Shown here in pieces: positions 9,001-64,000 of a DNA stretch of 64,000 bases. The translations under genes were made by a program, and so were the position numbers. Under the pieces are notes generated by a model. The model saw only the letters and a program-made list of their open reading frames with translations. It made no database searches and was not told the DNA's origin. The DNA lies in IMG/VR virus record IMGVR_UViG_3300028364_000014, positions 1 to 64,000 of that record. One strand, given 5' to 3'. How positions within the stretch are numbered: position 1 is the first letter of the stretch; each line of letters begins with the position of its first letter.

Positions 9001-9921
9001 CTCTTTTGCTTGAGGGATTTTGTTTATTACTTTAGATATTTCTGAAGTTATTACTTGAGCTAATTTTAAAGGATCTTCAGTGGCTTTTTTTACCACCGCA
9101 GTCTTCTTCTTAACAGCGGACGCCCTAAAACTTGTCACACTTTCTTTAAAAGCTGATGCCCCATCATTAAACTCTTTAGGAAGCTTCTTAACTTCACTAC
9201 GCACCAAAGTAATATCAGCAATTAACTCTTTAAAAGCAGTACCCATTTGAGCCATCAAACTTAAATACGTTTTAAACTCGGTTATATCAAAACCACCACC
9301 ACTTTTACGCTGCTCATTTACAGCCTTACCAGCAGAAGCTATTTTAGTAAAACTTGACTCTAATCTTTTTAAAATAGCAGAAATATCTTTGAGAGAAGCT
9401 ATCATATCAGTAGGCATAGCTGCTTTTAAATTAGAATTCAATGCATTCTCAATACCTTTAAAAACTGAGGGATCTATTGTTACTACACCCTTAGTGTTTT
9501 TAGATAACTCATCTGCAAAGTTTTTATATGCGATTTCTCTTTGCTTACTAGATATTTTCAATGCGGAAGCAACATCTACCAGGCCTGACTCTGGAGACTT
9601 TTGTACTTTAGCAGCTACATCTTTAACAGACTGCTTAGTGATGTCCACAACAAGGCGTTGTAACATATTGGCTAATTCAGTCTTGGTTACACCACCACTA
9701 TCTCCAGACGCATTACTAGTTATAACCTTACTAAGGATAGTAGGGAGTTCTTTTTTAATAGCAGATGCTACCGCATTAACGATACCGTCCTGCGTGCTTG
9801 ACATCCCCTTATTAAACTCAGTGTATAATTGCTTTAAGCTGGAATTTGGGGCTGACTGTTCATTTGCCCCTGAAGTGGTACCAGTAGATTTAATATTTAT
9901 ATTGACGTTTTTTTCGCCCAA
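1..9921 (-). CDS. Giant tape-measure-position protein containing a single-chain two-barrel (beta + beta-prime) RNA polymerase; 3' end beyond window
   Basis: TTG start at 9921 with GGAGG 7 nt upstream. The frame is consistent at every point checked down to position 1 (3307 codons); its absence from the ORF track fits an ORF running off the edge. In-frame motifs: ANTFEDQMVISG (~5845-5880), GRKFTTRYGMKGV (5428-5466), VLGKTGSVQEAFFTRK, SVRYPFTGTSSVQPYE (~2750-2793), LDFDGDQIEVH (DFDGD 2449-2463), IQKGMDVKHAG (1636-1668). Follows tail tube and chaperone genes. Confidence 0.85.
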   Translation of the reverse strand, partial: MGEKNVNINIKSTGTTSGANEQSAPNSSLKQLYTEFNKGMSSTQDGIVNAVASAIKKELPTILSKVITSNASGDSGGVTKTELANMLQRLVVDITKQSVKDVAAKVQKSPESGLVDVASALKISSKQREIAYKNFADELSKNTKGVVTIDPSVFKGIENALNSNLKAAMPTDMIASLKDISAILKRLESSFTKIASAGKAVNEQRKSGGGFDITEFKTYLSLMAQMGTAFKELIADITLVRSEVKKLPKEFNDGASAFKESVTSFRASAVKKKTAVVKKATEDPLKLAQVITSEISKVINKIPQAKESEVGKSLDAIAKKLESVPDFIVVMKQLTKLVEELKGSPSGSIDADALKGNLVKLTDAVSMIPKELVPKGVTNNKEVKDWNAKLELVVEGAGEVATFIKDIKSLAGIEVPLSVVTDKSLKGAKKDLDDLGRSKNVDFTASVSKNTIISDLEKLRKKADSTPFNIELVTDSQKLITQLQSDFKQQFNVAVSASSTTGNKPDEKIFSDLNQFLSVLKDTLRSNLYVEPKNQSSQGLYDAIMKVVTQIAASKDDPNKLKAVITSGIDTKTAGNLLSKEILPRDITRLIASLGDKLSDLTDAINSQQTSNPFSGTTGSTSQNRLPSTNEQDKLKQIEVRQRMREQSEKFRLGKDIKTSQKSAPADYKYKTSKETLYGYKSDVITPGKDYELPTPKTRIDTGEKARQIIKENVNTTAKSLMDLRNFMIKQVEEGLALRGPVEQTYDKKTKVITQSQKWKILRGDDAQDPSEYFKLASGINKKVAGKQWTFQIADVGAIAKEIEKMRRDNKDFTPVDRTQSPEALKSLFKDTVKNDLLNKNRSNLGESVGTWLKRVPTDDIKSWKFSQPDSAENLVRIKNKTNEAGPGVPKKMSDMLNSMNIGKLESIYQETLGEMEANKRLNIGVAGSSKGSKSRSALTRTLAVPAARLTETGAQIFETSTGSQRVIPKFAEYKTGFENLFNQLKSFGTNMPEKYTERIQKAGIRPDRKEYVESNKLAQEMLTDLASASDANKGRLVSTYKKGAIVRSAELARTEQGDPETFKVEAIRNIDQMGESLKDGSISVGQFIQAMDGAGVSALDVVKRMETVDFKNIYQVFEKVLSNYAPGESPIDKLTKNPNHDKTVREYESYLSKLVGTIPIADPSRPRRYAHQEKIVNMMTMTSPVYEKGAAGLDPDQSKSYIRDLNMVLKNYMNESKVLSTTEYARNIPQDVTTLSTLGVPESSASTLDEYRSSFKEDSKYLSSLKATNLKMHSDVLPEMSPFGQQFQQAGRNIASTTNAMAYRQKGVPGTEFPGLRSTRENEQIAGGRYGDQGYGFNVIAELRSTANTFEDQMVISGKLAEVLTSVTKTIVQPDALGRLDLITSEGNLRDLPSNAISVEDIRSRIKGEGGKKGQGNVLTDTDPLAQIDELNRVFQNVLGVPQKYRGRADKTLITDIQKAVTVARGQDINVQTAKIAETFFNYYGRKFTTRYGMKGVAVSPSKGFKDSSVLEAAYKTKNIKVLSDSEREKAGLGTAILPKSMGSLLSEVIQKNRAVILRSDPDSETGTKYTGKDVDLLKDQLKASGSKFMMSMFTDKSAGVVSEKDAMVQSDLFEDAKKMVNSFGGSLEQGLSGIAGVKMLHRKEVEGAKQFEEKPIDIRINSSNAGKRGLQTESLEMMMNNVIGSGWQGSTTLNTKFDTNTYKSMLGTMEEGKELFPSLGEYSKVLGFSGTGKSQGSIRDSLLKDMTVSRGLISGTEAKGLRDKKTKGGVLSEDETESLSKRDKAVTEANAAAALEAKSSYYSRIIDEFGKARKGFVGPKFVEIVEDPSANPAWSKSDIENQVKGEKLNIPAYGAYSTIFGKDSAMMQGVSGEIPLDARKHWEYLKGLQVLNTDSPELKQSLLGSAQKVGLDELHSFYGSTGGFGKDLDPERSLVSTVLDTAKFPGAMDVSIPDTRDISKKESFYVPGALARTTYPEPLLAGERGLDGVSRRLTQVINSAKHLEDIINGAEISDDGSTNKSDTKGRIIKHMQELREEVDRVVSVDGKGRNEQGKIQYKDFLDPQDQSSLEATLRGLTDVMGDSQVDQAFNRGGGTKKDYVMGQLYTKQKERGQKEPQAYSETINAAVDQIIGLDPSKRESSPLKHQGRYDVDSMIDESFRSGVQDLNKLAKGLKVTPATKEDRLQQAVDSLDRAKIEYYHTLAQTVLGKTGSVQEAFFTRKIPAIMAKATTAMVDKTDDLNAFAKALESVSKDSDLGTEEIKSLQEAANKIKGVSKGHSEIIKNQKDKGFVTLKQHELGVSEDYAKKLPARFKRRYAQDNTGDLKRVKQTQGETLKELLEYRELLETGNPSGMDEVNKMDVRDQLKNELTPYIESVRYPFTGTSSVQPYEAKLLKEESKDGGGRFLAKHTLMAPGVPEMDLGGFAEAKNKVEDVITGLSAKREEEWDKEDPDLDKIKKLTGTINQLNKAVSDVIPKYIAHQQKLDFDGDQIEVHSAQTMAARQDIAKHYKKITTFDKDVNSTAQVFRDSFTYGATTGEKSTGEFLFAEQQMKFNKKFPEQEGFKFLESPFLTEDLEYLDKSKRLDILSNIPNSTGVTPEPAQVLENVARNIFRDDKTIDSVVKTLDSVKLGDDKGINIEMLRAALATLPEGVGKSIDLGVRDELYEAKHANTVNAQLYKINTGQDTEGLNRVLKIFESNLGFGKGEISDTADFSPSVELQKRFPMDLKSLGKGMGNELNTMVNELVRVGIQKGMDVKHAGETPIASEIVGSLSKGPKGVAELQSNIETNKSYGDLKDFSDAQKKATSIRLGGMSTSDLFDDALKIAQGGGDKFKATSLAQDKVEGKLDRSALKAYITEALGFNSFLEELSRQIQEAAIEGVERDLAKMSPTKRNIKLGTKKPREYAENLIGDQMRSKGIDIKNTAEEHLTPLYHLRTSAASPYSQRTRYNKKYDDVAAPELKNFKLRDSDERKVFEKKFKEARAVAKNLKDSFGDLSSYGKDDLGSYALLGQSTVENLFNDQKKIASINAQLEGNKDILEIAPMNRIAQDNHLPFVKDIMDQPINEAYKALEQLNRTVGMPVMDKADQIQLEDKYADDAAVFVRSQVDPNDEEKTNVENDKIRKKLALLEQLDRLTKAAATKAKEGDFLGSLFEKSDLSLEEKYKQSRSRLKEGSQYNLSNIPPSMGTGATSVGGGGGMASTGSGSTGIPSFTGGGPLTYDSGKVVPVHIHSIADNAGVMLGAGRGMAATTGGGGQFSDKMTAKIEEAQKIVQELTGGLNNLKDSDFGQKYRASQLKGKASMSGP

Positions 9922-30828: not shown

Positions 30829-33819
30829 TTATTTAATTCTTTTCTTTAATACCGCGTGGCCTAGTCCGTATTCCAATAGTGGGGGTGCTTGAAAACTTGA
30901 AGTGCCTTGAGATCCTAAATAATCAAAACTAGTCCCTACTCTACTACGCACTAAGCCACTTACACTATGAAGAATAGGACCATCTCCCTCTTCGAGTTCC
31001 CTCTCAACCTGTCTTGCTCCATGGGCTCCTAATATAAGTGCAGAATATAAATCCTTATTCATATGCTTAGTAGGAGTATCGAAATGCAATATACCAGTAG
31101 AAGTTTGAGTAACTACTATATTTAATAACTGTGATTTAAGCGTTATTATATTTATATAAGCCCTAGCTAATAAATCGTTAGTAGAATTAGATGGATTATC
31201 TGGAAATAAAAGACTCTTATCCTCAAACATAGCTTTTGTAGTAAAATTGGCATCAGCTATCCAAGTAGGATTAAAATTAACCATATCTAGTATATGTCTT
31301 CCTTCTAAATGTATATGATCTTGGTTTCCTCTATCAATAATAGGTTCGGTTTCTCCGTAACCCTCCTCTAATAAATCACATACTGCCTTTCCACCTCCGC
31401 CTTTATCCATGAATATTCTAATGATATTATATTGATTACAAAGTTGTTGTACTGATCTTGTAAGTCCTTGTGTGGTCTGCTTTTTAAGTTCTATTACATT
31501 AACTATTTTATTAGGTTTACCTATTTCAATAATAACCACACCACAACTGGCGCTTCCCCCCTGATTAGGGTCAATACCCATTATATACTGTTTATTAGGC
31601 GCTCCATTGAACTGTAAAGTAAAATCATTCCCTAAAGTACAATCATCTAATAGGGATGCCTTAAAAAATCCCTCTGAATCTGAAACCATGGCAGCTTCAT
31701 ATTCCATACTATACTCATGTCTAGACATAATACGTTTAGCTTCAGCAATATTATTATTATCCAAGAACCCCTCAGGTAAGTCCCAATAAGGTACTTGCCA
31801 CACTGCATAATCACAATCCTTACCTTGAGCTTCAGCTTCCGCCACCATCTTCCAATGGTCCCTCATACGTCGCCACATATGATTAAATTTATAATACCCT
31901 GAGGAAGTCATTACCATCTTGTTAACTTTTTCCTCAGCAAAATCATCAGCAGCAGCAAGACCAGCATTAATCAAACGAGTCTGTTCCTCTAGTCTACGAA
32001 CTCTTTCCATCGGTGCCAAAGAGGTTGCTCCCATTGGTCTTACTACCATATCCAAAGTTTGATCTGGAACTTGCGCTAACTCATCCACAAGAATTAGATA
32101 GAAACGTGATCCACGAATTTTACTACCATCTCCTAGTGGTAGTCCCTCAATATATGATGGAGTTTTACCAGCAACCGACTTAAATTTTAAATAAGCTGTG
32201 TCTGAACCACGAGTTGGTTTCTTTGCAGAAGCTTCTCTAAGAATTGAAGATTGATCATATAGTTTCTCTACTTCAGCAAATATCATTTTTGAATTGTGAT
32301 TAATAAACCCGTTAGCCCAATAACAGTGTTCATTTTTTACTTCTATATCTATTGTTTCTGAAAAGAAGTAATCAACCTCTTTAATTTTAACAAAGTATAA
32401 CCCTTGTTCATATAATTTTTTGGCTTTATTGTAATTATCCTTTATTAATTTATTTGTAAGACCAATAGCCCTAGCTAAACTTTCTTCTTGATTAAAATGG
32501 TTATCTATATAAGCATTAAGCTTTTCTTTCTTTCTTAAGCATCTAAATCCAACAGTATCATTGAATCTTTTGATAAAAGTTTGTCCTGTAATCCTAACTT
32601 TATAGGCTTCTGCACATTTAGACGGTTTATTTCCTTGCGATAATTGTCTTATACATGCCTTTTTACTTATACCAAAGTTAGACACTATACCTAAATTTAG
32701 TAGTATAGCCTGCACTTCTTTAGCTAGTTGTTTAGAAGAAGTACTAAAGGCAATTTCAGAACCTTTATTTTTTTGCACATAAAAACACCCATCTGTGTCA
32801 TATAAACCCTGTAAACAAGCTATTAAGTTATCTCGTGAAGCTTTTTTTAAAATACTAGGAATCTTTTTATCCAGAGCTGTTGTTTTAGTAAAACCACACT
32901 CTAATAAATACTGGGCTAGTTGCTTACAAAAGTATTGAATTTCCCAAGTATCATTCCTTCTATTCCTTCTATCTATCTTTTCTTCTTTATCTACACAAAA
33001 ATATCTTCTTAGATTATTCTCAAAAGAGTCTAATAAATCCTGGTCTTCACTTACAAAGTCTACACGCTGTTTTCTTTTATTTTTACTAACAGAAACACAG
33101 CCATCACCTAGTAAAAGACCCATCCAATAAGATAAAGAAGGTGTTAATTCTTTAGGTATTAAACAATTTTTAGTTCTCCAATCATGTTCAAATTCAAATT
33201 CAGGCATCGAGTTATCATTACCAAAATAATTAAATCCTGTTTTTATTGCTATATATTCATCTTTTATATCCTGTAAGTCTTTAAATTCAGTATCTAAATC
33301 ATCGTTTAAACACACAACGGCATGATCTATAGTACCAGACAATTCAAATCCTTTTGTAGTTTTTATATACTTACATGCTTTATCTTTATCTGTCCATTTA
33401 CTGACTACTGTATTATGATTAAAATTTGACTGTACTCTTGTTTTTCCTGGAATTACTTTATTATAAAAATCCTCTGTACCTGTATTTAATCCTTCATTTG
33501 TCCAAAACGTAGCAAGTGTGTCTGATTTTATTAACGATTGTCTAAATACTGGGCCAATTAGACCTACCCTATAACCTGGATACAACAAGCAACTTAATGC
33601 AGCTAAAGTACCGAGCATAAAAGTTTTTCCCACGCCACGTCCACAAATAGCTATGACGTAGTTCTTAAACCACATGTCTCTAAAAACCAATCGCTGAATA
33701 GGTGCTAAATCTACCCCTAGGAGCTCATAAGCGGCTGTACAAGGGTGAGCTCTATAAAACTCTATAAGTTCCTTACCTTGTACCAGCAACGCTTCCATGT
33801 TTTGTCTTTTTTTAGCCAT
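30829..33819 (-). CDS. terL: Terminase large subunit with intein
   Basis: Walker A CGRGVGKT, Walker B LILVDE, nuclease GIDP and IFMDKGGG, KDLYSAL; intein insert after GPVFRQ. Confidence 0.92.
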   Translation of the reverse strand: MAKKRQNMEALLVQGKELIEFYRAHPCTAAYELLGVDLAPIQRLVFRDMWFKNYVIAICGRGVGKTFMLGTLAALSCLLYPGYRVGLIGPVFRQSLIKSDTLATFWTNEGLNTGTEDFYNKVIPGKTRVQSNFNHNTVVSKWTDKDKACKYIKTTKGFELSGTIDHAVVCLNDDLDTEFKDLQDIKDEYIAIKTGFNYFGNDNSMPEFEFEHDWRTKNCLIPKELTPSLSYWMGLLLGDGCVSVSKNKRKQRVDFVSEDQDLLDSFENNLRRYFCVDKEEKIDRRNRRNDTWEIQYFCKQLAQYLLECGFTKTTALDKKIPSILKKASRDNLIACLQGLYDTDGCFYVQKNKGSEIAFSTSSKQLAKEVQAILLNLGIVSNFGISKKACIRQLSQGNKPSKCAEAYKVRITGQTFIKRFNDTVGFRCLRKKEKLNAYIDNHFNQEESLARAIGLTNKLIKDNYNKAKKLYEQGLYFVKIKEVDYFFSETIDIEVKNEHCYWANGFINHNSKMIFAEVEKLYDQSSILREASAKKPTRGSDTAYLKFKSVAGKTPSYIEGLPLGDGSKIRGSRFYLILVDELAQVPDQTLDMVVRPMGATSLAPMERVRRLEEQTRLINAGLAAADDFAEEKVNKMVMTSSGYYKFNHMWRRMRDHWKMVAEAEAQGKDCDYAVWQVPYWDLPEGFLDNNNIAEAKRIMSRHEYSMEYEAAMVSDSEGFFKASLLDDCTLGNDFTLQFNGAPNKQYIMGIDPNQGGSASCGVVIIEIGKPNKIVNVIELKKQTTQGLTRSVQQLCNQYNIIRIFMDKGGGGKAVCDLLEEGYGETEPIIDRGNQDHIHLEGRHILDMVNFNPTWIADANFTTKAMFEDKSLLFPDNPSNSTNDLLARAYINIITLKSQLLNIVVTQTSTGILHFDTPTKHMNKDLYSALILGAHGARQVERELEEGDGPILHSVSGLVRSRVGTSFDYLGSQGTSSFQAPPLLEYGLGHAVLKKRIK
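32293..33537 (-). mobile_element. Intein (415 aa) with LAGLIDADG endonuclease in TerL
   Basis: Starts SLIKSDT, ends YWANGFINHN followed by Ser+1; LLLGDGC and LQGLYDTDG motifs; removal gives GPVFRQ-SKMIF. Confidence 0.9.
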
Positions 33820-49925: not shown

Positions 49926-51413
49926 TTAGTAAGTCACCAAGCCGCAATTGTTTGTCAATTTACGACAACGTTTAATGCCAAAAGTATCTAATTTTTTTGG
50001 ATTAAGAATGTTCTCAAAAGTAATAACCTCACCTTTGTTTTGCACGCCTTTACAAACTTGTATCATTGATTCTACGTTGACAACATCACCTTTTCGGATC
50101 TTGTAGTCAGTGATTAAACTTCTCATTACTTTTTTTCCTGGGATTGCAACTATAACTGTTGAGTTAAGCTTCCCCTCAACCATGAGAGATTGTTTTAATT
50201 CGGTAAGACTCTTTTTCTTAGGGTCTTGTCCTGCCCGTCGTTTACGATTCCAGGCTACTATCTTTTTCTTTTTTTCCGGTATTGAGTCAAAAATCATATA
50301 TCTACGATCCGTAGATCTTAACGTAAATGACCGGGTGTGCCTAGGAAATTGTCTCATATTCAACTCAGAATTATAATCTTTCCAAGAGTAATCTTGTAAA
50401 TCCTGATTTCCTAAACTGTCGTTGAATGCAATGAGGCTTGCATCACTGGCATGAGATTTAATAATATTGTCTCGATTCCTAACGCCACTCGTAATATATC
50501 CGTAAGTGTCTTGAATTGGACATTTGTCTTCAAATTCATTCCAGATCGTTTTCATGACTGAATTTAAAACTCCAGCATCACGGTATCCGTTTACAGAAGT
50601 AGATTCCTTTGGACATTTTAATCCATTTTTGTGAACTTTGTTATGACAATTTTCACACAGCAATATTAAATTTTCAGGTCGATCTGAACCACCATTACTC
50701 TTCCAAGTGATATGATGAACTTCGTTTCTAATTTTACCAACATCTTTTTTACAGATTTGACATTGGTAATTGTCTCTATTCCTTACATAACTTTTTACGT
50801 TTTCAAAACCAAATTGTAATCCTTTTTGATACCAAAAAGATTGGACCTTTGGAGTAATCATCTTGTGGATATCAAATTTATTATACTCTAAATGAATTTT
50901 AACTTGTTCAATTGGAACCAACTTTAATAACTTTGCCAATACATTTCTATGCGATTGGATCAAATGAAGATGAGTAACTTGAAACTTATGTTTACTTCGA
51001 TTTTTCCAAATAGGGTGCTTGAACTTAGCATTTCCAGCCCCATACTTTTTTTTGATACCTTTTCGAGCCAGATATCTTCGACTGCGGCGATACATTCTTT
51101 TGGCATCAAGCCCTTCTTTGATCTTTGCTGTGCGTAGGTATACCTCTCCGTTAATAAGTTTAGTAATAACATCCCTTTGGATTTTAAATACTGCAAACCC
51201 AATGTTCGCATATCCAGGATCAATACCTATTCTAAACTCACAATTAATTGTTTCACTTTTATAAAATACTTTTGTTAATAATTGAACAATAATTACGTCT
51301 TTGTTTAATCGTTTTATAACTTTAGCTTTCTTGTTTCGAATCAACCTTCCCACCATATCGTGTTTTTTGGTAGGGTGGCCGATATTGTTTCTTGCGTCTA
51401 CAATGTAAATCAT
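49926..51413 (-). CDS. iscB: IscB RNA-guided endonuclease
   Basis: PLMP-like N-terminus (GHPT), RuvC-I GIDPG, Arg-rich RRSRR bridge helix, RuvC-II HLEYNKFD, HNH EVHH...PENLILLCENCH, RuvC-III SHASDA. Confidence 0.92.
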   Translation of the reverse strand: MIYIVDARNNIGHPTKKHDMVGRLIRNKKAKVIKRLNKDVIIVQLLTKVFYKSETINCEFRIGIDPGYANIGFAVFKIQRDVITKLINGEVYLRTAKIKEGLDAKRMYRRSRRYLARKGIKKKYGAGNAKFKHPIWKNRSKHKFQVTHLHLIQSHRNVLAKLLKLVPIEQVKIHLEYNKFDIHKMITPKVQSFWYQKGLQFGFENVKSYVRNRDNYQCQICKKDVGKIRNEVHHITWKSNGGSDRPENLILLCENCHNKVHKNGLKCPKESTSVNGYRDAGVLNSVMKTIWNEFEDKCPIQDTYGYITSGVRNRDNIIKSHASDASLIAFNDSLGNQDLQDYSWKDYNSELNMRQFPRHTRSFTLRSTDRRYMIFDSIPEKKKKIVAWNRKRRAGQDPKKKSLTELKQSLMVEGKLNSTVIVAIPGKKVMRSLITDYKIRKGDVVNVESMIQVCKGVQNKGEVITFENILNPKKLDTFGIKRCRKLTNNCGLVTY

Positions 51414-51419
51414 CTTTTC

Positions 51420-51675
51420 CCCTCTTAATAAATACCCATTGATCGGGCAAACTAAGAATAGTTCGGTTCGTCTCCCCCGACTTAATCAAAAGTAATACTG
51501 ATCTTCGTTACCTACTAATCAGCAATGAGGACTTGTAATGCTCCGCTTACCTCCATTGCTACGGACTGGGAGTGGCATCCGTAGGTGAACTCTCGATTAA
51601 ACGTCTGTTCAATCCTGAATTAAATCAGCTTGCTGTTGATTGCAAGCCCAAGTCCTTTAGGCTTGGGTAATTGAC
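51420..51675 (-). ncRNA. omegaRNA/HEARO-type scaffold of IscB
   Basis: About 255-nt structured noncoding region between the left end and iscB, with CACCTACGGATGCCACTCCCAGTCCGTAGC and GTCGGGGGAGAC elements typical of HEARO/omegaRNA. Confidence 0.8.
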
Positions 51676-58472: not shown

Positions 58473-58548
58473 CTCTTCTTCGGAGGTAAGTCCTAATCGT
58501 GGTTGTTTGTAAGCAGTGCTTCAAAAATAAATAATCAATAGAAAGGTG

Positions 58549-58702
58549 TTCTGACGAGTTAGATACTAAAGGTCTTCAGTACTAAAGGTCTTCAGTACTA
58601 ATAGTTTAAGTACTAATAGTTTAAGTACTAATAGTTTAAGTACTAAAGGTCTTCAGTATTGATAGTTTAAGTACTAAAGGTCTTCAGTACTGATGAGTTA
58701 GA
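58549..58702. repeat. Mixed 15/16-bp tandem repeat array at the strand switch
   Basis: A=TACTAAAGGTCTTCAG, B=TACTAATAGTTTAAG, C=T(A/T)CTGA(T/C)GAGTTAGA in the order C A A B B B A B' A C. Confidence 0.9.
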
Positions 58703-58997
58703 TACTATGTAGTTACTGCCTATATAGTAGTTAGTTTAATATAGCCTAAAGGTACTACTATCGTGGTCTAATACAATTTTAGAACCCCCAAAATAAGTGG
58801 GACAGGGACACTGTAGTATGATAGAGTATTATTGCATACATACAATACATTATAGGCCCCTTACTTCTTATTTAGTAGAGTGCCTTTATGCGATGACAGC
58901 TCTATGATAAACATACCAGCCGGGTGAGTCGGTTTGATATGAGATCAAGTTTGATCCCCCCCCCTCCCCCTGGGAGGCAACTACAAAGGAGATTATT

Positions 58998-59231
58998 ATG
59001 ACTACCACACAAAAGACTTATGAGCAAGTAATCGAGACTAAGGAATCTTATATTGATGTATATCAGCCAGTTGCAGGTTGGAAACCTCAACTAATGGTTT
59101 GGATGGAAGAGGATGGCATGACTGGATTTGTATGTCTCAACACAAGCTACTTCGCATATGAAACAAGGGAGAAGGCTGTTGTTGAGGCTAAGCAGTGGGC
59201 TGAGGATGAGGATATAGCCTATGTAGAATAA
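58998..59231 (+). CDS. Early-region hypothetical protein (77 aa, acidic)
   Basis: AAGGAG RBS. Confidence 0.7.
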   Translation: MTTTQKTYEQVIETKESYIDVYQPVAGWKPQLMVWMEEDGMTGFVCLNTSYFAYETREKAVVEAKQWAEDEDIAYVE

Positions 59232-59234
59232 ACA

Positions 59235-59300
59235 ATCCGAAACGGGACTATACATCCCGTCTACAGCCTTAAGCAAGCTGTACTGATGAAGGTAGCTTAA
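59235..59300 (+). ncRNA. Hammerhead ribozyme (type II-like, open stem II)
   Basis: GAAAC-GGGA/UCCC-GUC stem III, UACAGC/GCUGUA stem I, CUGAUGA core; 2-bp stem II after an extra A; loop I UUAAGC can pair with the 3' GCUUAA. Confidence 0.75.
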
Positions 59301-59327
59301 TTAATATATAACTTAAGGAGACTTATC

Positions 59328-59516
59328 ATGACTAATTCAATCAACATTACTGACGCACCAAAATGTAAAACATTTGAAATGAATGGTAATACTTGTGAAG
59401 GTTGTTTGGTTGACCCTTGTCCTTGTGGAACCGATGACGCTAATTCACTTGAATACATCGATCATGTTGGATATTGTATAATTAACAAAAATAACGAAAT
59501 TGTGGAGGTGATGTAA
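59328..59516 (+). CDS. Cys-rich small protein (62 aa)
   Basis: AAGGAG RBS. Confidence 0.65.
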   Translation: MTNSINITDAPKCKTFEMNGNTCEGCLVDPCPCGTDDANSLEYIDHVGYCIINKNNEIVEVM

Positions 59517-59662
59517 TGATAAAGTTTATTAAACCTTTAGTAATGTTTACCACATCATTCAGCGCAGTATGGTACGCAGCATTCATTCTTGACCCAGACT
59601 TTGTTAAGTTTGTCTGGGAAGCAGTCAAATACACTACCCAGCATTGGCTGTGGATAGTGTAG
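59516..59662 (+). CDS. Small hydrophobic protein (48 aa), not in the ORF track
   Basis: GGAGG RBS; MIKFIKPLVMFTTSFSAVWYAAFILDPDFVKFVWEAVKYTTQHWLWIV. Confidence 0.55.
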   Translation: MIKFIKPLVMFTTSFSAVWYAAFILDPDFVKFVWEAVKYTTQHWLWIV

Positions 59663-59705
59663 ATTTTAACTCTTTCGTCTTGGGCAGGACGTTAACTTAC
59701 CCATC

Positions 59706-59773
59706 ACTCGTCTGAGCGAGTATAAACAGTCCTTAGGCTCAGAGCGTCGTCCCACTTCGGTGGGGCGGGTGGC
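59706..59773 (+). ncRNA. Pistol ribozyme, copy 1
   Basis: P1 ACUCG/CGAGU, loop UCUGAG pairing with CUCAGA (pseudoknot), UAAA linker, GCGU junction, P3 with UUCG loop, G-GU-GGC cleavage context. Confidence 0.85.
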
Positions 59774-59807
59774 AATAACGCCTTAATTAGTTAAATAGGA
59801 GTTTATT

Positions 59808-60095
59808 ATGAAAGTAAGAACAACTGCACTTATTATGTCGTCTATCCTCGATTCAGGACGCACCATTGATATGAGTGGGGCAAGTAACCTTCTTCAGTTT
59901 GGTAATAAAGCCAGTTACCTTGGTGGTGGGTGGTGGTACATCAGTGATAGTGGAGGAACATCATTGAAGAAAACCATTATGGCTATTAGGTCACTTACCA
60001 GGTCTGGTAAGGTGTGTGTGGAATGTGGAAAACTTCACATCTGTAATGACAAGTGTGTAAAATGCGCCAGTGCATCATCGCCTGAATACTGGTAA
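59808..60095 (+). CDS. Hypothetical protein with C-terminal zinc ribbon
   Basis: AGGAG RBS; CVECG...CVKC. Confidence 0.65.
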   Translation: MKVRTTALIMSSILDSGRTIDMSGASNLLQFGNKASYLGGGWWYISDSGGTSLKKTIMAIRSLTRSGKVCVECGKLHICNDKCVKCASASSPEYW

Positions 60096-60146
60096 TCAAC
60101 AGTCCTTTCGAATATTAAATATATAGATATTAAAAGGAGTATTACT

Positions 60147-60347
60147 ATGGAATTAAAGGAAGTGGGAAAAAGAGAACTAGCGGAACAGTACAATATTCCT
60201 GAAGAGTATTTAAGGTATATAGGACCCACTGATTGCTCAATGCTAGCTGGAGGAGGTAAACTTCATCAGTATAATATCCACCTCAAAGGACACCCGAACG
60301 ACAAATCGACGGTTGCATACAGACAAAAGGAGGTACAAAATGGTTAA
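60147..60347 (+). CDS. Hypothetical protein (66 aa)
   Basis: AAGGAG RBS. Confidence 0.65.
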   Translation: MELKEVGKRELAEQYNIPEEYLRYIGPTDCSMLAGGGKLHQYNIHLKGHPNDKSTVAYRQKEVQNG

Positions 60348-60744
60348 TGTATACGTAGACCTTGACGGCACCCTACTAGATAGCCGGCTTGATGATAAGT
60401 ACAAAGCCATCAGCACTCAGTATGGTAAGGGTTTTGCTGATGACTGGTATGAATCCACCTATTACGATACCCTTGAGCTCAATTTGGCTCTGTGGTGTCG
60501 TCTATTGGTATTAAAGGAAGAGGGTGCTTCTATTGTAGCCTGGACTAATAGACGAGAATCTAAGGCTGACATGACATTCAGTAATTTGGCTAAGCTTGGT
60601 ATTATGGATTTGTTTTCAGGATTTATGTTCTGTAACGGACAAAAACATACTATGCCACTCAGGGATGGAGTAGTATTTGAGAATGAGTTCGACAATGAGA
60701 TTGAATGTTCAGAATTTAATTTTATCCCAACATTTAAACTGTAA
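60340..60744 (+). CDS. HAD-superfamily hydrolase
   Basis: ATG at 60340 after AGGAGG; YVDLDGT motif I, AWTNR motif II. Confidence 0.75.
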   Translation: MVNVYVDLDGTLLDSRLDDKYKAISTQYGKGFADDWYESTYYDTLELNLALWCRLLVLKEEGASIVAWTNRRESKADMTFSNLAKLGIMDLFSGFMFCNGQKHTMPLRDGVVFENEFDNEIECSEFNFIPTFKL

Positions 60745-60755
60745 GGAGATTCAAG

Positions 60756-60848
60756 ATGGATAAATGGTTAGAAATTGTGTCTGGAATTGTGTGTGGGTTG
60801 CTGATTGTTGGTATGATATATATGGCAATGCTCGGAATGGCTAACTAA
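60756..60848 (+). CDS. 30-aa single-TM peptide, not in the ORF track
   Basis: AAGGAG RBS; MDKWLEIVSGIVCGLLIVGMIYMAMLGMAN. Confidence 0.55.
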   Translation: MDKWLEIVSGIVCGLLIVGMIYMAMLGMAN

Positions 60849-60860
60849 TAAGGAGGCATT

Positions 60861-61058
60861 ATGAAGGTAAGCAGATTTACTACAAAAAAGAATAACTATA
60901 GCAAGAGATACCTTGAGAAAGAGTATAGAGAGGAGTATTTGGTCGCTAAGTTATCAAAGAAATCCTCTACTCTTGCATACGATTTTAATTCTCCTACAGA
61001 AAATACAATAAACAACTGGGAAAGAACTTCAAATGGAGCAAAGATTTGGAGTTTTTAA
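60861..61058 (+). CDS. Hypothetical basic protein (65 aa)
   Basis: AAGGAGG RBS. Confidence 0.65.
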   Translation: MKVSRFTTKKNNYSKRYLEKEYREEYLVAKLSKKSSTLAYDFNSPTENTINNWERTSNGAKIWSF

Positions 61059-61094
61059 TATATTAACCTATAACTGCCCCTTACTTAGAGGGGC

Positions 61095-61156
61095 ACCACT
61101 AAAGCACCGTTGTCAGGGTTCCCAAGTCCTGGATGAGAAAACTGCTGAGGGGTGGT
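61095..61156 (+). ncRNA. Twister ribozyme candidate (P1 type)
   Basis: P1 ACCAC/GUGGU, L1 UAA opposite GAGGG, P2 AGCA/UGCU, P4 CAGG/CCUG with loop GUUCCCAAGU; T1 CCC/GGG; T2 pairing imperfect. Confidence 0.6.
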
Positions 61157-61383
61157 TACAATTATCACTATAAGGATAAATGCGTATGTTACTATTATGA
61201 TGTTCTTAATGGCCCTAAAGTGTTTTACCATCAACTACAGGTGTTGCTCCAAAATGTAGTGTAGTAGCTATCTAATACCTACGGGGCAAAATCACATCTT
61301 AGGATACCATAACTAAAAGATACGAGTGAACTTTTAAAAGCAATTCTATCTATATTTATAAATAACTAATAGGAGATTACACC

Positions 61384-62691
61384 ATGAAGACAATCACAGT
61401 TGAAAACAATCAGGTATTTATCACAAACACCATTACCAATGAGAAAGTAAAACATAACTATTCAATGAACAACCGACCACTCAGTGTTGTTGAACTGTAT
61501 ACGAGTATTGATCCTATAGATATTAGAAAATCTCGTGAAAAGAAAGAAATAACTGCATTGTGGCGAGCAGCTGGAGATGAGCTAGGGACTTCAGTAGCTA
61601 ACTTCTCCAGAATGTTAAATGGTGCGTGTTATAAAGCTTATATTAAAGACAATGAAGACCTACACAACAGGTTTGGGGTTGAGTACAAAAAAGTTGGAGG
61701 AAAAGTTAAAAGAGTCAGAACCCGTTTAGCTGTTGAAATGGTAAATACTTACTGTGAAGTAATACGACAATATATTGCTGACGGTAATACTCATTTAGCC
61801 GGATTTAGTATTCCGTTCGGTGAAGCTAGTGTAGCTAAAAAGAAATTAGGCAAAGGATTGTGGAAACAACTAAATAAGAATTCTAAAACTAAGAATGATT
61901 TAATATGTAAGATACTTAATGCGTACTCTGAACCTAAACTTGATACTACAGCTTATACAGCCATGTTGAATAATACACCATCTACAATACTCAGTATGGT
62001 AGACAGTGCCAATACATTGCTGGCTTTCTTTAATACGGAAAGTTCAACAGGGATGAAGGATACTGTTAAAAAGTCAATTCAGCACATAGGACTTCCTATG
62101 TACAAATTAGATTATGAAAGACTGCAACGTGTTATTGTATTGATTCGTGATACACACCGTATGCATCAAAACTTTAACCCTAATTGGTCTTTAACTAGAA
62201 TTAAAGAAGAACATCAAATAACAATAAACGAGCAGTTTGCCTTAAGACACTCTAAAGAGAGGTTTAGTTGGTTAAACCTCATTACTCAGTACTTTGAGGC
62301 TAATGGTAATAAAGCTGAACTCATGTGCTCAGCATATGATATAGCTATACTAGGTAAGGACCAAGGACATTACGTAGGTAATTATGCACGTTTCAGTAAA
62401 GATGCTAACTACGTTGTATATAGAATTACTGACTGTGAGGGAACGATCTCTACATTAGGGATTAGGCACCCAGATGAAACAAATCACTTATGTGATCAAC
62501 ACTACCTGAGATTTAATTATATAGTAGCTAATGAAGCTTGTTTATCCTTTGCAGCTAAAATTACCAGACAAGTAAAAAAGGAATTAGAGTTGATTGATAT
62601 ATCCAAAAAACAGGAACCTTTAAAACCTATCACACAAGCTATCGATTTTCCTCAAATTGAAGCTGATGATCCAGAAGACACCCCATTCTAG
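61384..62691 (+). CDS. PcfJ-like domain protein (435 aa)
   Basis: C-terminal WSLTRIKEEH...LGKDQGHYVGNYA...VVYRI..TLGI resembles the PcfJ HCVGxY region (Cys replaced by Tyr). Confidence 0.55.
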   Translation: MKTITVENNQVFITNTITNEKVKHNYSMNNRPLSVVELYTSIDPIDIRKSREKKEITALWRAAGDELGTSVANFSRMLNGACYKAYIKDNEDLHNRFGVEYKKVGGKVKRVRTRLAVEMVNTYCEVIRQYIADGNTHLAGFSIPFGEASVAKKKLGKGLWKQLNKNSKTKNDLICKILNAYSEPKLDTTAYTAMLNNTPSTILSMVDSANTLLAFFNTESSTGMKDTVKKSIQHIGLPMYKLDYERLQRVIVLIRDTHRMHQNFNPNWSLTRIKEEHQITINEQFALRHSKERFSWLNLITQYFEANGNKAELMCSAYDIAILGKDQGHYVGNYARFSKDANYVVYRITDCEGTISTLGIRHPDETNHLCDQHYLRFNYIVANEACLSFAAKITRQVKKELELIDISKKQEPLKPITQAIDFPQIEADDPEDTPF

Positions 62692-62697
62692 TCAATT

Positions 62698-62763
62698 ATC
62701 TGTTTGAGCAGGTACACAGGCCTTAAGCTCAAAGCGTCGCCTCACTTCGGTGGGGCGGGTGGC
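62698..62763 (+). ncRNA. Pistol ribozyme, copy 2
   Basis: P1 AUCUG/CAGGU, loop UUUGAG pairing with CUCAAA (compensatory change relative to copy 1), GCGU, P3 with UUCG, P2 GCC/GGC; linker UACAC instead of UAAAC. Confidence 0.8.
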
Positions 62764-62814
62764 AAAATGGACATTCCGTCCACAATTAAACCGTAATACA
62801 TAGGAGATTACACC

Positions 62815-63420
62815 ATGACTAACATTATCAAAAAGAATGCTAAAGTACTTAACAATCGTGAACTTATAACTGGAATGGGCGCTAATGGTATTGTGCCCTC
62901 TCTTAACAACAAAGGCACACTTATTTTTACTCATTGCCCTATGTGCGAAGCAGAGCTCCTTGCAGATAACCCTGGTTATACTAAAGCTATTCTTAGTAAT
63001 AAACCTTGGTATCAAGCTACGCCAGCTATTGTGTTCAAAATGCCTAATGGCTCTACTCTCAAGGCGTGCTGTTGTGGTTATAGAGAGCTAGTAATTATTA
63101 CACCTAAACCTAGGTGCTCTAACTGCGGTAGTGTTCTTAAGAACGAAGGGGACAGGTGCTATGGTCCTAACTGCCAGCCTCCTACACAACAGGAGCTGGA
63201 CTCCATTGCGACCGAGAAAAAGCAAGCTCAGGAGATAAAGGCTGCTGAATTGAAAGCCAAACAAGAGGCTAAGCAAAAAGCCACTAAACCTCCTGTCAAA
63301 CAGTGCGTAACTCCTGGATGTACAAACCCAGTGCCTGAGAGTCGTTTTGTTAGATGCGAGGCATGTCGTGCAACACGAAGAACCCCAAAGGAGGAGGCTT
63401 GTACTGAAGTTCAGATGTAA
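62815..63420 (+). CDS. Multi-zinc-finger protein (201 aa)
   Basis: AGGAG RBS; CPMC, CCC, CSNC..C...C, CVTPGC..CEAC. Confidence 0.65.
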   Translation: MTNIIKKNAKVLNNRELITGMGANGIVPSLNNKGTLIFTHCPMCEAELLADNPGYTKAILSNKPWYQATPAIVFKMPNGSTLKACCCGYRELVIITPKPRCSNCGSVLKNEGDRCYGPNCQPPTQQELDSIATEKKQAQEIKAAELKAKQEAKQKATKPPVKQCVTPGCTNPVPESRFVRCEACRATRRTPKEEACTEVQM

Positions 63421-63589
63421 TCTGCTGGCTACCGAAGATGAACTCATCTATCTCATGATAGATGGACTAACCTATATCTACTGCCTTGATAAAGCTAAGC
63501 ATCCATACTTCATTAAAACATTGAAGTATAAACCAGGCAAAGCTATTAACTATATCAAAGCAGAAGCCTATTGGACAGAGATGGGTTAA
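63347..63589 (+). CDS. Hypothetical small protein (start uncertain)
   Basis: Track ORF overlapping the previous gene; probable start downstream (ATG 63455). Confidence 0.4.
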   Translation: MLDARHVVQHEEPQRRRLVLKFRCNLLATEDELIYLMIDGLTYIYCLDKAKHPYFIKTLKYKPGKAINYIKAEAYWTEMG

Positions 63590-63641
63590 ATTAAACCTGG
63601 GCACCTGAGTAATTAAGGTGTCCAAATTAAGGAGAATTATC

Positions 63642-63980
63642 ATGCAAAAAGCACTAAAAACTGTTAAACGAGCTACCTATGCACAAAAACGACAAGAGGC
63701 TTTTGATATGTTGAACAACACATATGAGGAAGAAGGTGTTCTTCTGTGCAGTGGGGAATTTAAAATCAATTCTCTGATGGCTATGATGATGGCAAGATCT
63801 GCTTTTAAAGAGACTTATGGAGCACTCGCCCCAAGGTACTTCAACATACCGGCTGACGAGCTTCCAGGAACTGAAGTACACCCAGGTGTATATATTTCAC
63901 GAGATGAGAATTCTCATTATTCTTTGGAGTACGAAGACGGTTTCCAAATGGAGGAATTTATTCAACAATGGGTATGTTAA
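63642..63980 (+). CDS. Hypothetical protein (112 aa)
   Basis: AAGGAG RBS before ATG 63642. Confidence 0.65.
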   Translation: MQKALKTVKRATYAQKRQEAFDMLNNTYEEEGVLLCSGEFKINSLMAMMMARSAFKETYGALAPRYFNIPADELPGTEVHPGVYISRDENSHYSLEYEDGFQMEEFIQQWVC

Positions 63981-64000
63981 ATAAATAAACAAGGGGCTCT

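What the first reader, a model, noticed from the sequence alone, without database searches (positions are those of the whole stretch)
59706..59773. Pistol ribozyme pair showing covariation between two copies 3 kb apart
Seen: copy 1 (59706-59773) and copy 2 (62698-62763) differ in sequence but keep the pairings. The pseudoknot is UCUGAG/CUCAGA versus UUUGAG/CUCAAA (compensatory change), P1 is ACUCG/CGAGU versus AUCUG/CAGGU, and P3 swaps G-C and G.U pairs around a UUCG loop. Both keep the GCGU junction and G-GU-GGC site of the pistol consensus. Copy 2 has UACAC where the A-minor linker is normally UAAA, a natural variant to test.
Basis: partly seen in the sequence, partly recalled or inferred. 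Interest (0 to 1): 0.7.

Follow-up and report, generated by a model that had tools for sequence, protein, structure and literature searches.

The report
Two pistol ribozymes in a jumbo phage
Two genuine pistol-class self-cleaving RNA motifs sit between genes of an uncultured 238-kb lake phage, probably cutting a multi-gene transcript into pieces; this is the usual setting for the class, and the only unusual feature is that the second copy lacks a nearly universal three-adenine linker.

Summary
Rfam's Pistol model (RF02679, gathering score 34.5 bits) hits 59706-59774 (71.3 bits) and 62698-62764 (49.0 bits), both full length on the + strand. These are the only Pistol hits in the 237,910-bp phage record. 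The copies differ at 14 positions. Every change inside a helix keeps pairing: three compensatory pairs (two in P1, one in the pseudoknot) and two one-sided G-C/G.U changes in P3 plus one in P1. The catalytic core and the G|U scissile step (59769|59770 and 62759|62760) are intact in both.

The pair is not unusual. Sampling phage contigs showed same-strand arrays of 2-6 pistols within a few kb are common. Pistols typically start a few nt after the stop codon of a co-oriented gene and lie 20-70 nt before the next gene, as here. The best reading is cis-cleaving elements that punctuate a polycistronic phage transcript. Cleavage itself was not tested, because no RNA run was listed.

Copy 2 is an outlier. 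Its J1/2 linker is ACACA, with no AAA, while 0/107, 0/102 and 2/105 unique natural pistols lacked AAA in three overlapping samples. Its activity is uncertain. Verdict: new members of a known class, of modest interest.

The parts
59706..59774 (+). Pistol ribozyme copy 1 (69 nt). P1 is 59706-59710/59717-59721. The pseudoknot is 59711-59716/59738-59743. The J1/2 linker AUAAACA is 59722-59728. P2 is 59729-59732/59771-59774 (2 canonical pairs, or 3 with U59730 bulged). The core is UUAG 59733-59736, G59737-C59745, G59744 and G59746. P3 is 59747-59755/59760-59768 with a UUCG loop.
   Evidence: Rfam RF02679 at 71.3 bits, model 1-68; pair counts; identical in three other metagenome contigs
59769..59770 (+). 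Predicted scissile phosphodiester of copy 1, between G59769 and U59770 (model G63|U64). The 5' product would end in a 2',3'-cyclic phosphate and the 3' product would begin with a 5'-OH.
   Evidence: Model alignment; cleavage at the G-U junction between P3 and P2 is established for the class (PMC4604425, PMC6154101); not tested here
62698..62764 (+). Pistol ribozyme copy 2 (67 nt). P1 is 62698-62702/62709-62713. The pseudoknot is 62703-62708/62728-62733. The shortened J1/2 linker ACACA is 62714-62718. P2 is 62719-62722/62761-62764 (3 canonical pairs). The core is UUAA 62723-62726, G62727-C62735, G62734 and G62736. P3 is 62737-62745/62750-62758 with a UUCG loop.
   Evidence: Rfam RF02679 at 49.0 bits, model 1-68 with a 2-nt deletion at model positions 19-20; pair counts; identical in the main strains
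62759..62760 (+). Predicted scissile phosphodiester of copy 2, between G62759 and U62760.
   Evidence: Model alignment; not tested
59516..59662 (+). Small ORF (48 aa) upstream of copy 1. Its stop codon ends 43 nt before the ribozyme.
   Evidence: ORF list; no family hit
59797..60095 (+). AGGAG ribosome-binding site (59797-59801) and a 95-aa ORF (59808-60095, with CxxC...CxxC cysteines). This is the first cistron downstream of cut 1. The start codon lies 38 nt after the cut.
   Evidence: Sequence; ORF list; translation
61384..62691 (+). 435-aa ORF whose homologues carry PF14284 (PcfJ-like). It is the last cistron before copy 2, which starts with 6 nt between the stop codon and its first base (first base 7 nt past the stop).
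62802..63420 (+). AGGAG ribosome-binding site (62802-62806) and a 201-aa ORF (62815-63420). This is the first cistron downstream of cut 2. The start codon lies 55 nt after the cut.
   Evidence: Sequence; ORF list
59612..59825 (+). Conserved island around copy 1. Two other strains show 0-1 differences here, while both flanks are about 10-30% diverged.
   Evidence: Alignment of L024 and L026 to the window; first read-laying table

Best explanation
Both elements are pistol-class self-cleaving ribozymes transcribed as part of a co-oriented, tightly packed plus-strand operon (about 59.0 kb onward) of an uncultured jumbo phage. Once transcribed, each should fold into P1, a 6-bp pseudoknot, P3 and a short P2. 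Each should then cut itself between G and U, at 59769|59770 and 62759|62760. Almost the whole ribozyme stays on the 3' end of the upstream cistron, as a compact pseudoknotted cap ending in a 2',3'-cyclic phosphate. The downstream cistron starts with a 5'-OH about 27-42 nt ahead of its AGGAG site. The likely effect is to break one long transcript into separately stable and separately translated pieces. Shown here: class membership, structure-preserving divergence, intergenic co-oriented placement, and the generality of that placement in phages. Inferred, not shown: cleavage, and its effect on RNA stability or translation. Copy 1 is very likely active. Copy 2 has the full catalytic core but lacks the A-triplet that forms A-minor triples with P1, so it may be slower or inactive.
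For: Rfam Pistol hits at 71.3 and 49.0 bits against a gathering score of 34.5, and these are the only two in the 237,910-bp record. Three compensatory and three one-sided pair changes, with 94% of cells paired against 36-48% for slid controls. The catalytic residues named in the literature are present in both copies: the purine equivalent to env25 position 32, the G-C pair, G40, G42 and the G-U step (PMC6154101). Similarity is confined to the ribozyme. No plus-strand terminator-like site lies between 58000 and 64000. Copy 1 is invariant inside a 214-nt island flanked by diverged DNA in other strains. A minor strain of copy 2 carries four substitutions, all inside helices and all pair-preserving. 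Context generalises. In about 115 phage pistols the upstream neighbour is co-oriented in 49 of 59 intergenic cases, and the ribozyme starts a median of 6 nt after that gene's stop codon. Locus L104 alternates gene-pistol-gene-pistol six times. Processing of polycistronic transcripts is the standing hypothesis for bacterial and phage ribozymes (PMC6765202).
Against: There is no RNA evidence, because no RNA run was listed, so neither transcription nor cleavage is shown. P2 has only 2-3 canonical pairs in both copies. Copy 2 lacks the AAA found in nearly all natural pistols. It can also form a competing AGGU/GCCU mini-hairpin that would sequester parts of P1 and P2. Relatives of the upstream PcfJ-like gene at 27-39% identity have no pistol nearby, so the ribozymes are not a required partner of these genes. 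The conserved island could reflect recombination block structure rather than selection. The ORF-context survey used crude ORF calls and has no matched control.
Confidence: 0.72

Rival explanations
1. Only copy 1 is a working ribozyme. Copy 2 is a decaying or strongly attenuated duplicate that still scores as Pistol but no longer folds productively, because it has lost the J1/2 A-triplet.
For: The A19-A21 triplet forms A-minor triples with P1 and is highly conserved (PMC6101554). It is present in 107/107, 102/102 and 103/105 unique natural phage pistols. Copy 2 scores 22 bits lower than copy 1. A competing AGGU/GCCU hairpin is the predicted nested MFE fold of copy 2.
Against: All helix substitutions relative to copy 1 are pair-preserving, including three double changes, which is not expected in a decaying copy. 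The catalytic core is fully intact. The minor-strain variant again changes only in pair-preserving ways and keeps the ACACA linker. Two other natural pistols with AAA-less short linkers pass the Rfam threshold: L152:8983-9052 at 55.3 bits and L157:7407-7472 at 42.1 bits. This suggests a tolerated rare variant.
Confidence: 0.35
2. The pistols matter mainly at the DNA or selfish-element level. They would be short conserved joints that spread by duplication and gene conversion and mark recombination boundaries between swappable gene cassettes, with RNA cleavage neutral for the phage.
For: Copy 1 lies at a mosaic boundary, a conserved island between diverged blocks. The interval between the copies is an indel hot spot in other strains, with a 1,388-nt insertion near 60105 and a 221-nt insertion near 60850. 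The 3' halves of the two copies are almost identical while the 5' halves differ. A minor strain carries copy 1 states inside copy 2, consistent with gene conversion. Arrays of pistols between small genes are common.
Against: A pure DNA-level role would not explain structure-preserving compensatory changes or retention of every catalytic nucleotide. The strict strand co-orientation with flanking genes points to an RNA-level role. The minor-strain unitig could be an assembly-graph chimera.
Confidence: 0.12
3. The two same-sense cuts release a 2,990-nt RNA (59770-62759) with 5'-OH and 2',3'-cyclic-phosphate ends, which the phage's own RtcB or RNA ligase re-joins or circularises.
For: These are the ends pistol cleavage produces (PMC4604425, PMC8782182). 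The same plus-strand module encodes an RNA ligase (genome 81464-82609; PF09414 + PF21189) and RtcB pieces (genome 83094-83636 and 83967-84557; PF01139). A small HAD-type phosphatase-like ORF with a VDLDGT motif lies between the copies.
Against: The ligase genes lie about 20 kb away, and the genome also has about 18 tRNA genes. This fits the usual tRNA-repair role of such enzymes (my own knowledge of phage RNA-repair systems). RtcB is split into two ORFs and may be interrupted or defective. The HAD-like ORF has no specific link to polynucleotide phosphatases; its best PDB hit is an acid phosphatase at E 0.009. No RNA data exist.
Confidence: 0.04
4. The elements are pseudoknot-type hammerhead ribozymes, which share the pistol's secondary structure and connectivity, rather than pistols.
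For: PK hammerheads and pistols have essentially identical secondary structure, including the A-minor triple on the first hairpin (PMC11300833).
Against: No hammerhead family hit anywhere in the window at E <= 1. The loop between P2 and the pseudoknot is the short pistol-type UUAG/UUAA rather than the longer conserved hammerhead core loop (PMC11300833). Both sequences match pistol-specific conserved positions.
Confidence: 0.01

Closest known systems
Pistol ribozyme class (Rfam RF02679; Weinberg et al. 2015; Harris et al. 2015, PMC4604425)
   Same: P1 hairpin, 6-bp pseudoknot between the P1 loop and the P2-P3 junction, P3 hairpin, 2-nt G-U junction as the cleavage site, conserved core nucleotides, phage-associated intergenic location, and occurrence near further ribozymes.
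   Different: P2 has only 2-3 canonical pairs, against 4 in the consensus. Copy 2 has a 5-nt ACACA linker without the A-triplet. The source is a 238-kb uncultured phage from lake and salt-lake metagenomes, rather than the Firmicutes and gut settings stressed in the original descriptions.
Pistol arrays in other uncultured phages (e.g. IMG/VR loci L104, L045, L069, L152 fetched here)
   Same: Several same-strand pistols within a few kb. Each starts within a few nt of an upstream stop codon and lies 20-45 nt before the next start codon.
   Different: The window's pair is more widely spaced (2,990 nt, spanning about five or six ORFs). Unusually, the two copies share an almost identical P3 and 3' half.
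Short-linker pistol variants L152:8983-9052 and L157:7407-7472
   Same: They lack the AAA triplet in J1/2 (AAUACA/AUACA and AUCAAG) yet pass the Rfam gathering score. L152's variant also sits next to a canonical pistol.
   Different: Their linker sequences and P1 sequences differ from copy 2. None has been tested biochemically as far as the papers searched here show.
Pseudoknot-containing hammerhead ribozyme (PMC11300833)
   Same: Same helix connectivity, a 6-bp pseudoknot, and an A-minor triple on the first hairpin.
   Different: It has the hammerhead catalytic core and a longer core loop. No hammerhead model matches here.

Membership tests
Pistol ribozyme (RF02679) | Covariance-model score at or above Rfam's gathering score (34.5 bits), full length | tested here: met
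   71.3 bits (copy 1) and 49.0 bits (copy 2), both model 1-68 (repeated)
Pistol ribozyme (RF02679) | P1 hairpin of about 5 bp with a 6-nt loop | tested here: met
   5/5 pairs in both copies, two pairs changed on both sides and one on one side
Pistol ribozyme (RF02679) | Six-bp pseudoknot between the P1 loop and the P2-P3 junction | tested here: met
   6/6 pairs in both copies, with one compensatory C-G to U-A change
Pistol ribozyme (RF02679) | P3 hairpin abutting the cleavage junction | tested here: met
   9/9 pairs in both copies, two one-sided G-C/G.U changes, UUCG loop
Pistol ribozyme (RF02679) | P2 helix (4 bp in the consensus) pairing the 3' end with the segment after J1/2 | tested here: inconclusive
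   Copy 1 has 2 canonical pairs (3 if U59730 is bulged) and copy 2 has 3. Helix 3 is 62.5% paired.
Pistol ribozyme (RF02679) | Conserved core: UUA, purine (env25 position 32), G-C pair, G (general base, env25 G40), G (env25 G42) | tested here: met
   UUAG-G...GAGCG-U in copy 1 and UUAA-G...AAGCG-U in copy 2. Roles are from PMC6154101.
Pistol ribozyme (RF02679) | Two-nucleotide G-U junction between P3 and P2 of strictly conserved length (the cleavage site) | tested here: met
   G59769-U59770 and G62759-U62760 align to model G63-U64 (PMC4604425)
Pistol ribozyme (RF02679) | Seven-nt J1/2 linker with an A-triplet forming A-minor triples on P1 | tested here: not met
   Met for copy 1 (AUAAACA). Not met for copy 2 (ACACA, with a 2-nt deletion at model positions 19-20). 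AAA is present in 107/107, 102/102 and 103/105 natural pistols. The role of the triplet is from PMC6101554.
Pistol ribozyme (RF02679) | Mg2+-dependent self-cleavage giving 2',3'-cyclic phosphate and 5'-OH ends | not testable with these tools
   No RNA run was listed for this phage. An in vitro assay is needed.
Pistol ribozyme (RF02679) | Phage-associated intergenic context, often near other ribozymes | tested here: met
   Jumbo-phage record. Both copies are intergenic and co-oriented with their neighbours. The same pattern holds in about 115 other phage pistols.
Pseudoknot hammerhead ribozyme | Hammerhead catalytic core in a long loop between helix I and the pseudoknot | tested here: not met
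   No hammerhead family hit at E <= 1 in the window. The corresponding loop is the 4-nt pistol type.

The most novel reading that the evidence does not exclude
The two same-sense pistols act as a cut-and-rejoin device. They would excise a 2,990-nt multi-gene RNA (59770-62759) whose 5'-OH and 2',3'-cyclic-phosphate ends are then sealed or circularised by the phage-encoded RtcB or RNA ligase lying about 20 kb downstream in the same transcription direction. A milder novel reading, more likely at about 0.5, is that copy 2 together with L152 and L157 defines a functional short-linker pistol subclass that folds without the canonical A-minor triplet.
Probability: 0.04. Interest if true: 0.8.

Novelty: new member of a known kind. 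Interest (0 to 1): 0.3.

Why it matters
The biological role of pistol ribozymes, and of most bacterial and phage self-cleaving ribozymes, is still described as largely elusive (PMC6765202). This locus adds no new class. It does give a clean natural example of the "one ribozyme directly behind each cistron" layout. It also offers a natural paired experiment: two paralogous pistols in one operon with the same P3 and cleavage site, one with the canonical A-minor linker and one without. Comparing their rates would measure how much the A-minor triple contributes in a natural sequence background. The survey done here (arrays of up to six pistols, and a median of 6 nt from the upstream stop codon) gives a testable rule for the transcript-punctuation hypothesis.

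Tried and rejected
1. Near-identical DNA search of 58500-64000 in cultured phages found nothing.

2. Searches for relatives of the flanking 435-aa and 95-aa proteins in IMG/VR found only an identical contig.

3. Contigs encoding homologues of the PcfJ-like protein at 27-39% identity (L016, L019, L020, L022) have no Rfam hit at E <= 0.1. The ribozymes are therefore not conserved with that gene.

4. The rest of the genome has no other ribozyme family above threshold, only about 18 tRNAs.

5. No RNA sequencing run was listed, so cleavage in vivo could not be examined. DNA runs gave only strain variation.

6. The sigma-70 promoter scan was at chance level, 19 found against 19.1 expected, and was not used.

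7. The pseudoknot-hammerhead reading was considered and rejected (PMC11300833).

8. An RNA-repair link for the HAD-like ORF 60313-60744 is not supported. Pfam gives 22.7 bits, below its cut-off of 27, and the best PDB hit is an acid phosphatase at E 0.009.

9. Several key papers were not held: Ren 2016, Nguyen 2017, Weinberg 2015, Lihanova 2021. Structural roles are therefore cited from secondary sources.

10. A predicted helix flanking copy 1 (59686-59694 with 59776-59784) has no counterpart at copy 2 and no covariation data. I treat it as possibly chance.

Full report
**Observation.** A scan of the whole window against Rfam 15 returns exactly two matches above gathering score. Both are Pistol (RF02679), on the + strand and full length (model 1-68). 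Copy 1 is 59706-59774 at 71.3 bits (E 5.2e-11). Copy 2 is 62698-62764 at 49.0 bits (E 6.6e-06). The gathering score is 34.5. A permissive scan (E <= 1) adds no hammerhead, twister or hatchet hit, only a sub-threshold HEARO match elsewhere.

**Covariation between the copies.** Aligned, the copies differ at 14 columns, including a 2-nt deletion in copy 2.

- Against the pistol structure with its pseudoknot, 94% of cells form standard pairs. Sliding the partners by 1-3 columns gives 36-48%.
- P1 has two pairs changed on both sides (U-A/C-G and C-G/U-A) and one changed on one side.
- The pseudoknot has one compensatory C-G to U-A change.
- P3 has two one-sided G-C/G.U changes opposite an identical 3' strand. 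So P3 is consistent with the structure but not compensatory.
- P2 is the weak point. Copy 1 has 2 canonical pairs (3 if U59730 bulges) and copy 2 has 3, against 4 in the consensus.
- The core residues that the literature ties to catalysis are all present in both copies: the purine at env25 position 32, the G33-C41 pair, G40, G42 and the G-U step (PMC6154101).
- Similarity between the copies ends exactly at the ribozyme borders.

**What genome this is.** The window is bases 1-64000 of a 237,910-bp IMG/VR virus record, estimated 87% complete.

- A long minus-strand module carries the terminase, the portal, PhoH and many HNH endonucleases.
- Transcription direction switches near 58.5 kb. The pistols lie in the plus-strand module that follows.
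- The portal is only about 23% identical to its nearest cultured relatives, which are Bacillus phages. No cultured phage shares the DNA.
- DNA runs holding the phage come from lake-water and salt-lake metagenomes.
- The rest of the genome has about 18 tRNA genes and no further ribozyme family. These two are its only Pistol hits.

**Local context.**

- Copy 1 lies between a 48-aa ORF (59516-59662) and a 95-aa ORF (59808-60095) that is preceded by AGGAG at 59797-59801.
- Copy 2 starts 7 nt past the end of the stop codon of a 435-aa ORF (61384-62691), so 6 nt lie between them. That ORF's homologues carry PF14284 (PcfJ-like).
- Copy 2 ends 50 nt before a 201-aa ORF (62815-63420) that is preceded by AGGAG at 62802-62806.
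- All these genes are co-oriented and closely spaced. No plus-strand terminator-like site was found between 58000 and 64000.
- Homologues of the 435-aa protein on four other contigs have no pistol or other Rfam RNA nearby. The ribozymes are therefore not tied to that gene.

**Population data.** Three independent metagenome contigs (L023, L024, L026) carry both copies with no change.

- For copy 1 this is informative. It sits in a 214-nt island (59612-59825) with 0-1 differences, while DNA on both sides is about 10-30% diverged in the same contigs.
- For copy 2 the flanks are nearly identical as well, so invariance there says little.
- A minor-strain unitig in two salt-lake runs has copy 2's flanks and ACACA linker plus four substitutions inside the ribozyme. 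These are 62732 A>G in the pseudoknot, and 62740 C>T, 62741 C>T and 62742 T>C in the P3 5' strand. All four preserve pairing.
- Three of those four are the copy 1 states. This hints at gene conversion between the copies, which would also explain their nearly identical 3' halves. A chimeric assembly path cannot be excluded.

- A covariance model built from the two window copies found 115 matches in 100 of those loci. Many loci hold 2-6 same-strand copies.
- Rfam confirms six Pistols within 4 kb in L104, four in L045, three in L069 and two in L152.
- In L104 the layout is strictly gene-pistol-gene-pistol. Each ribozyme begins within 0-34 nt of the upstream stop codon, in two cases overlapping it. 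The next ORF begins about 20-45 nt after it, except after the last copy, where the next called ORF follows after 136 nt.
- In a crude ORF survey of all hits, the upstream neighbour is co-oriented in 49 of 59 intergenic cases. The median distance from stop codon to pistol is 6 nt. The median distance from pistol to the next same-strand start is 67 nt.
- The window's two copies fit this rule. The literature already notes that bacterial ribozymes cluster with each other and with phage genes, and that their roles remain largely elusive. Polycistronic processing is the suggested role (PMC4604425, PMC6765202).

[quoted passage not shown] That gives it a structured 3' end with a 2',3'-cyclic phosphate. 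The downstream cistron is released with a 5'-OH just ahead of its ribosome-binding site. I infer that the two pistols split the operon RNA into three segments whose stability and translation are uncoupled. A compact 3' structure should impede 3' exonucleases, and a 5'-OH should be a poor entry point for 5'-monophosphate-stimulated RNases. Both points rest on my own knowledge of bacterial RNA decay, not on a test here. Class membership, structure and context are shown. Transcription, cleavage and the downstream effects are inferred. No RNA run could be listed.

**Copy 2's linker.** A19-A21 of the 7-nt J1/2 segment form A-minor triples on P1 and are described as highly conserved (PMC6101554; also PMC11300833).

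- Copy 1 has AUAAACA. Copy 2 has ACACA.
- In the linker-free sample, all 107 unique pistols have AAA.
- In the model-based alignment, all 102 unique pistols have it, including 17 that did not match the fetch pattern.
- In a second sample that leaves both P1 and the linker free, 103 of 105 have it.
- These three samples overlap, because all were drawn from the same collection.
- The two exceptions also have shortened or altered linkers and pass the Rfam threshold: L152:8983-9052 at 55.3 bits and L157:7407-7472 at 42.1 bits.
- Copy 2 is therefore one of a rare (about 1-2%) set of AAA-less natural pistols.
- Nested folding predicts a copy-2-specific competitor, an AGGU/GCCU hairpin closing the ACACAG loop.
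- Against decay stand the purely pair-preserving divergence and the intact core.
- I put the chance that copy 2 cleaves at a useful rate at roughly 0.55-0.65, and copy 1 at about 0.9.

**Rivals.**

- A pseudoknot hammerhead is excluded: there is no hammerhead hit and the core loop is the short pistol type (PMC11300833).
- A DNA-level or selfish role is suggested by the mosaic boundary at copy 1, by the indel hot spot between the copies, and by possible gene conversion. It does not explain the retention of the catalytic nucleotides, the compensatory changes or the strand co-orientation.
- The most adventurous reading uses the phage's own enzymes. An RNA ligase and a split RtcB lie about 20 kb downstream, and they could re-join or circularise the 2,990-nt excised RNA. 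These enzymes more plausibly serve tRNA repair, and the HAD-like ORF between the copies shows no specific tie to polynucleotide phosphatases.

**Verdict.** The finding is real and correctly interpreted, but it is an ordinary instance of a known class in its known habitat. The added value is threefold: a natural canonical/non-canonical linker pair in one operon, a rare AAA-less variant group, and quantified support for the cistron-punctuation layout.

Noticed in passing
window 49926-51675 (- strand): A 495-aa ORF (49926-51413) has RRXRR (PF14239, 9e-28) plus HNH (PF01844) domains, which is an IscB-like architecture. Directly 5' of it lies a sub-threshold HEARO/omega-RNA match at 51492-51675 (46.5 bits against a gathering score of 83, full model length). 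This looks like a phage-borne IscB-omega-RNA unit.
   Followed up: partly
window 1-9921 (- strand): A giant open reading frame of more than 3,307 aa runs off the start of the window and of the record. Its nature was not examined.
   Followed up: no
window 30829-33819 (- strand): The 996-aa ORF matches terminase large subunit only at residues ~509-935 (a 15-92 match is to unknown-function families), with endonuclease, HNH and helicase-like matches at about 225-470. This suggests an inserted homing-endonuclease or intein-like segment, or a fusion.
   Followed up: no
G000 83094-84557 (L145:2595-4058), outside the window: RtcB (PF01139) is split into two ORFs. The first covers profile positions 11-86 and the second 218-412. 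They are about 330 nt apart, and profile positions ~87-217 are not matched; the first ORF extends 44 aa beyond its match. No Rfam intron hit was found. This could be an unrecognised intron or intervening element, or a broken gene. An RNA ligase (PF09414 + PF21189) lies just upstream at genome 81464-82609.
   Followed up: partly
window ~60105 and ~60850-60863, compared with L023 and L024: Other strains carry a 1,388-nt insertion encoding a 304-aa ORF near 60105 (L023). They also carry a 221-nt insertion near 60850-60863 (L023, L024). In addition, 58.8-59.6 kb and 59.83-60.4 kb are strongly diverged or replaced. The interval around and between the pistols is therefore a hypervariable cassette region.
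   Followed up: partly
window 60313-60744 (+): A small HAD-superfamily phosphatase-like ORF has the VDLDGT motif after an internal Met (likely start near 60340). The family matches are weak: Pfam 22.7 bits (below cut-off), and PHROG phosphoheptose isomerase and polynucleotide kinase at E about 1e-5 to 1e-4.
   Followed up: partly
window 59686-59694 with 59776-59784: The predicted fold of copy 1 with its flanks includes an 8-pair helix (with one mismatch) that joins the sequence just upstream of P1 to the sequence just downstream of P2. It could clamp the weak P2 or hold the 3' product. There is no counterpart at copy 2 and no covariation data.
   Followed up: no
L104 1-4400; L045; L069 (IMG/VR contigs): These are arrays of three to six Rfam-confirmed pistols that alternate one-to-one with small ORFs. 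This is a striking gene-ribozyme-gene punctuation pattern, and it deserves a systematic survey.
   Followed up: partly
G000 139300-158300 (L006, L007), outside the window: A cluster of about 16-18 tRNA genes. One ARAGORN call has an undetermined anticodon, and one Rfam tRNA hit is 131 nt long (L007:2430-2560), which may contain an insertion.
   Followed up: no
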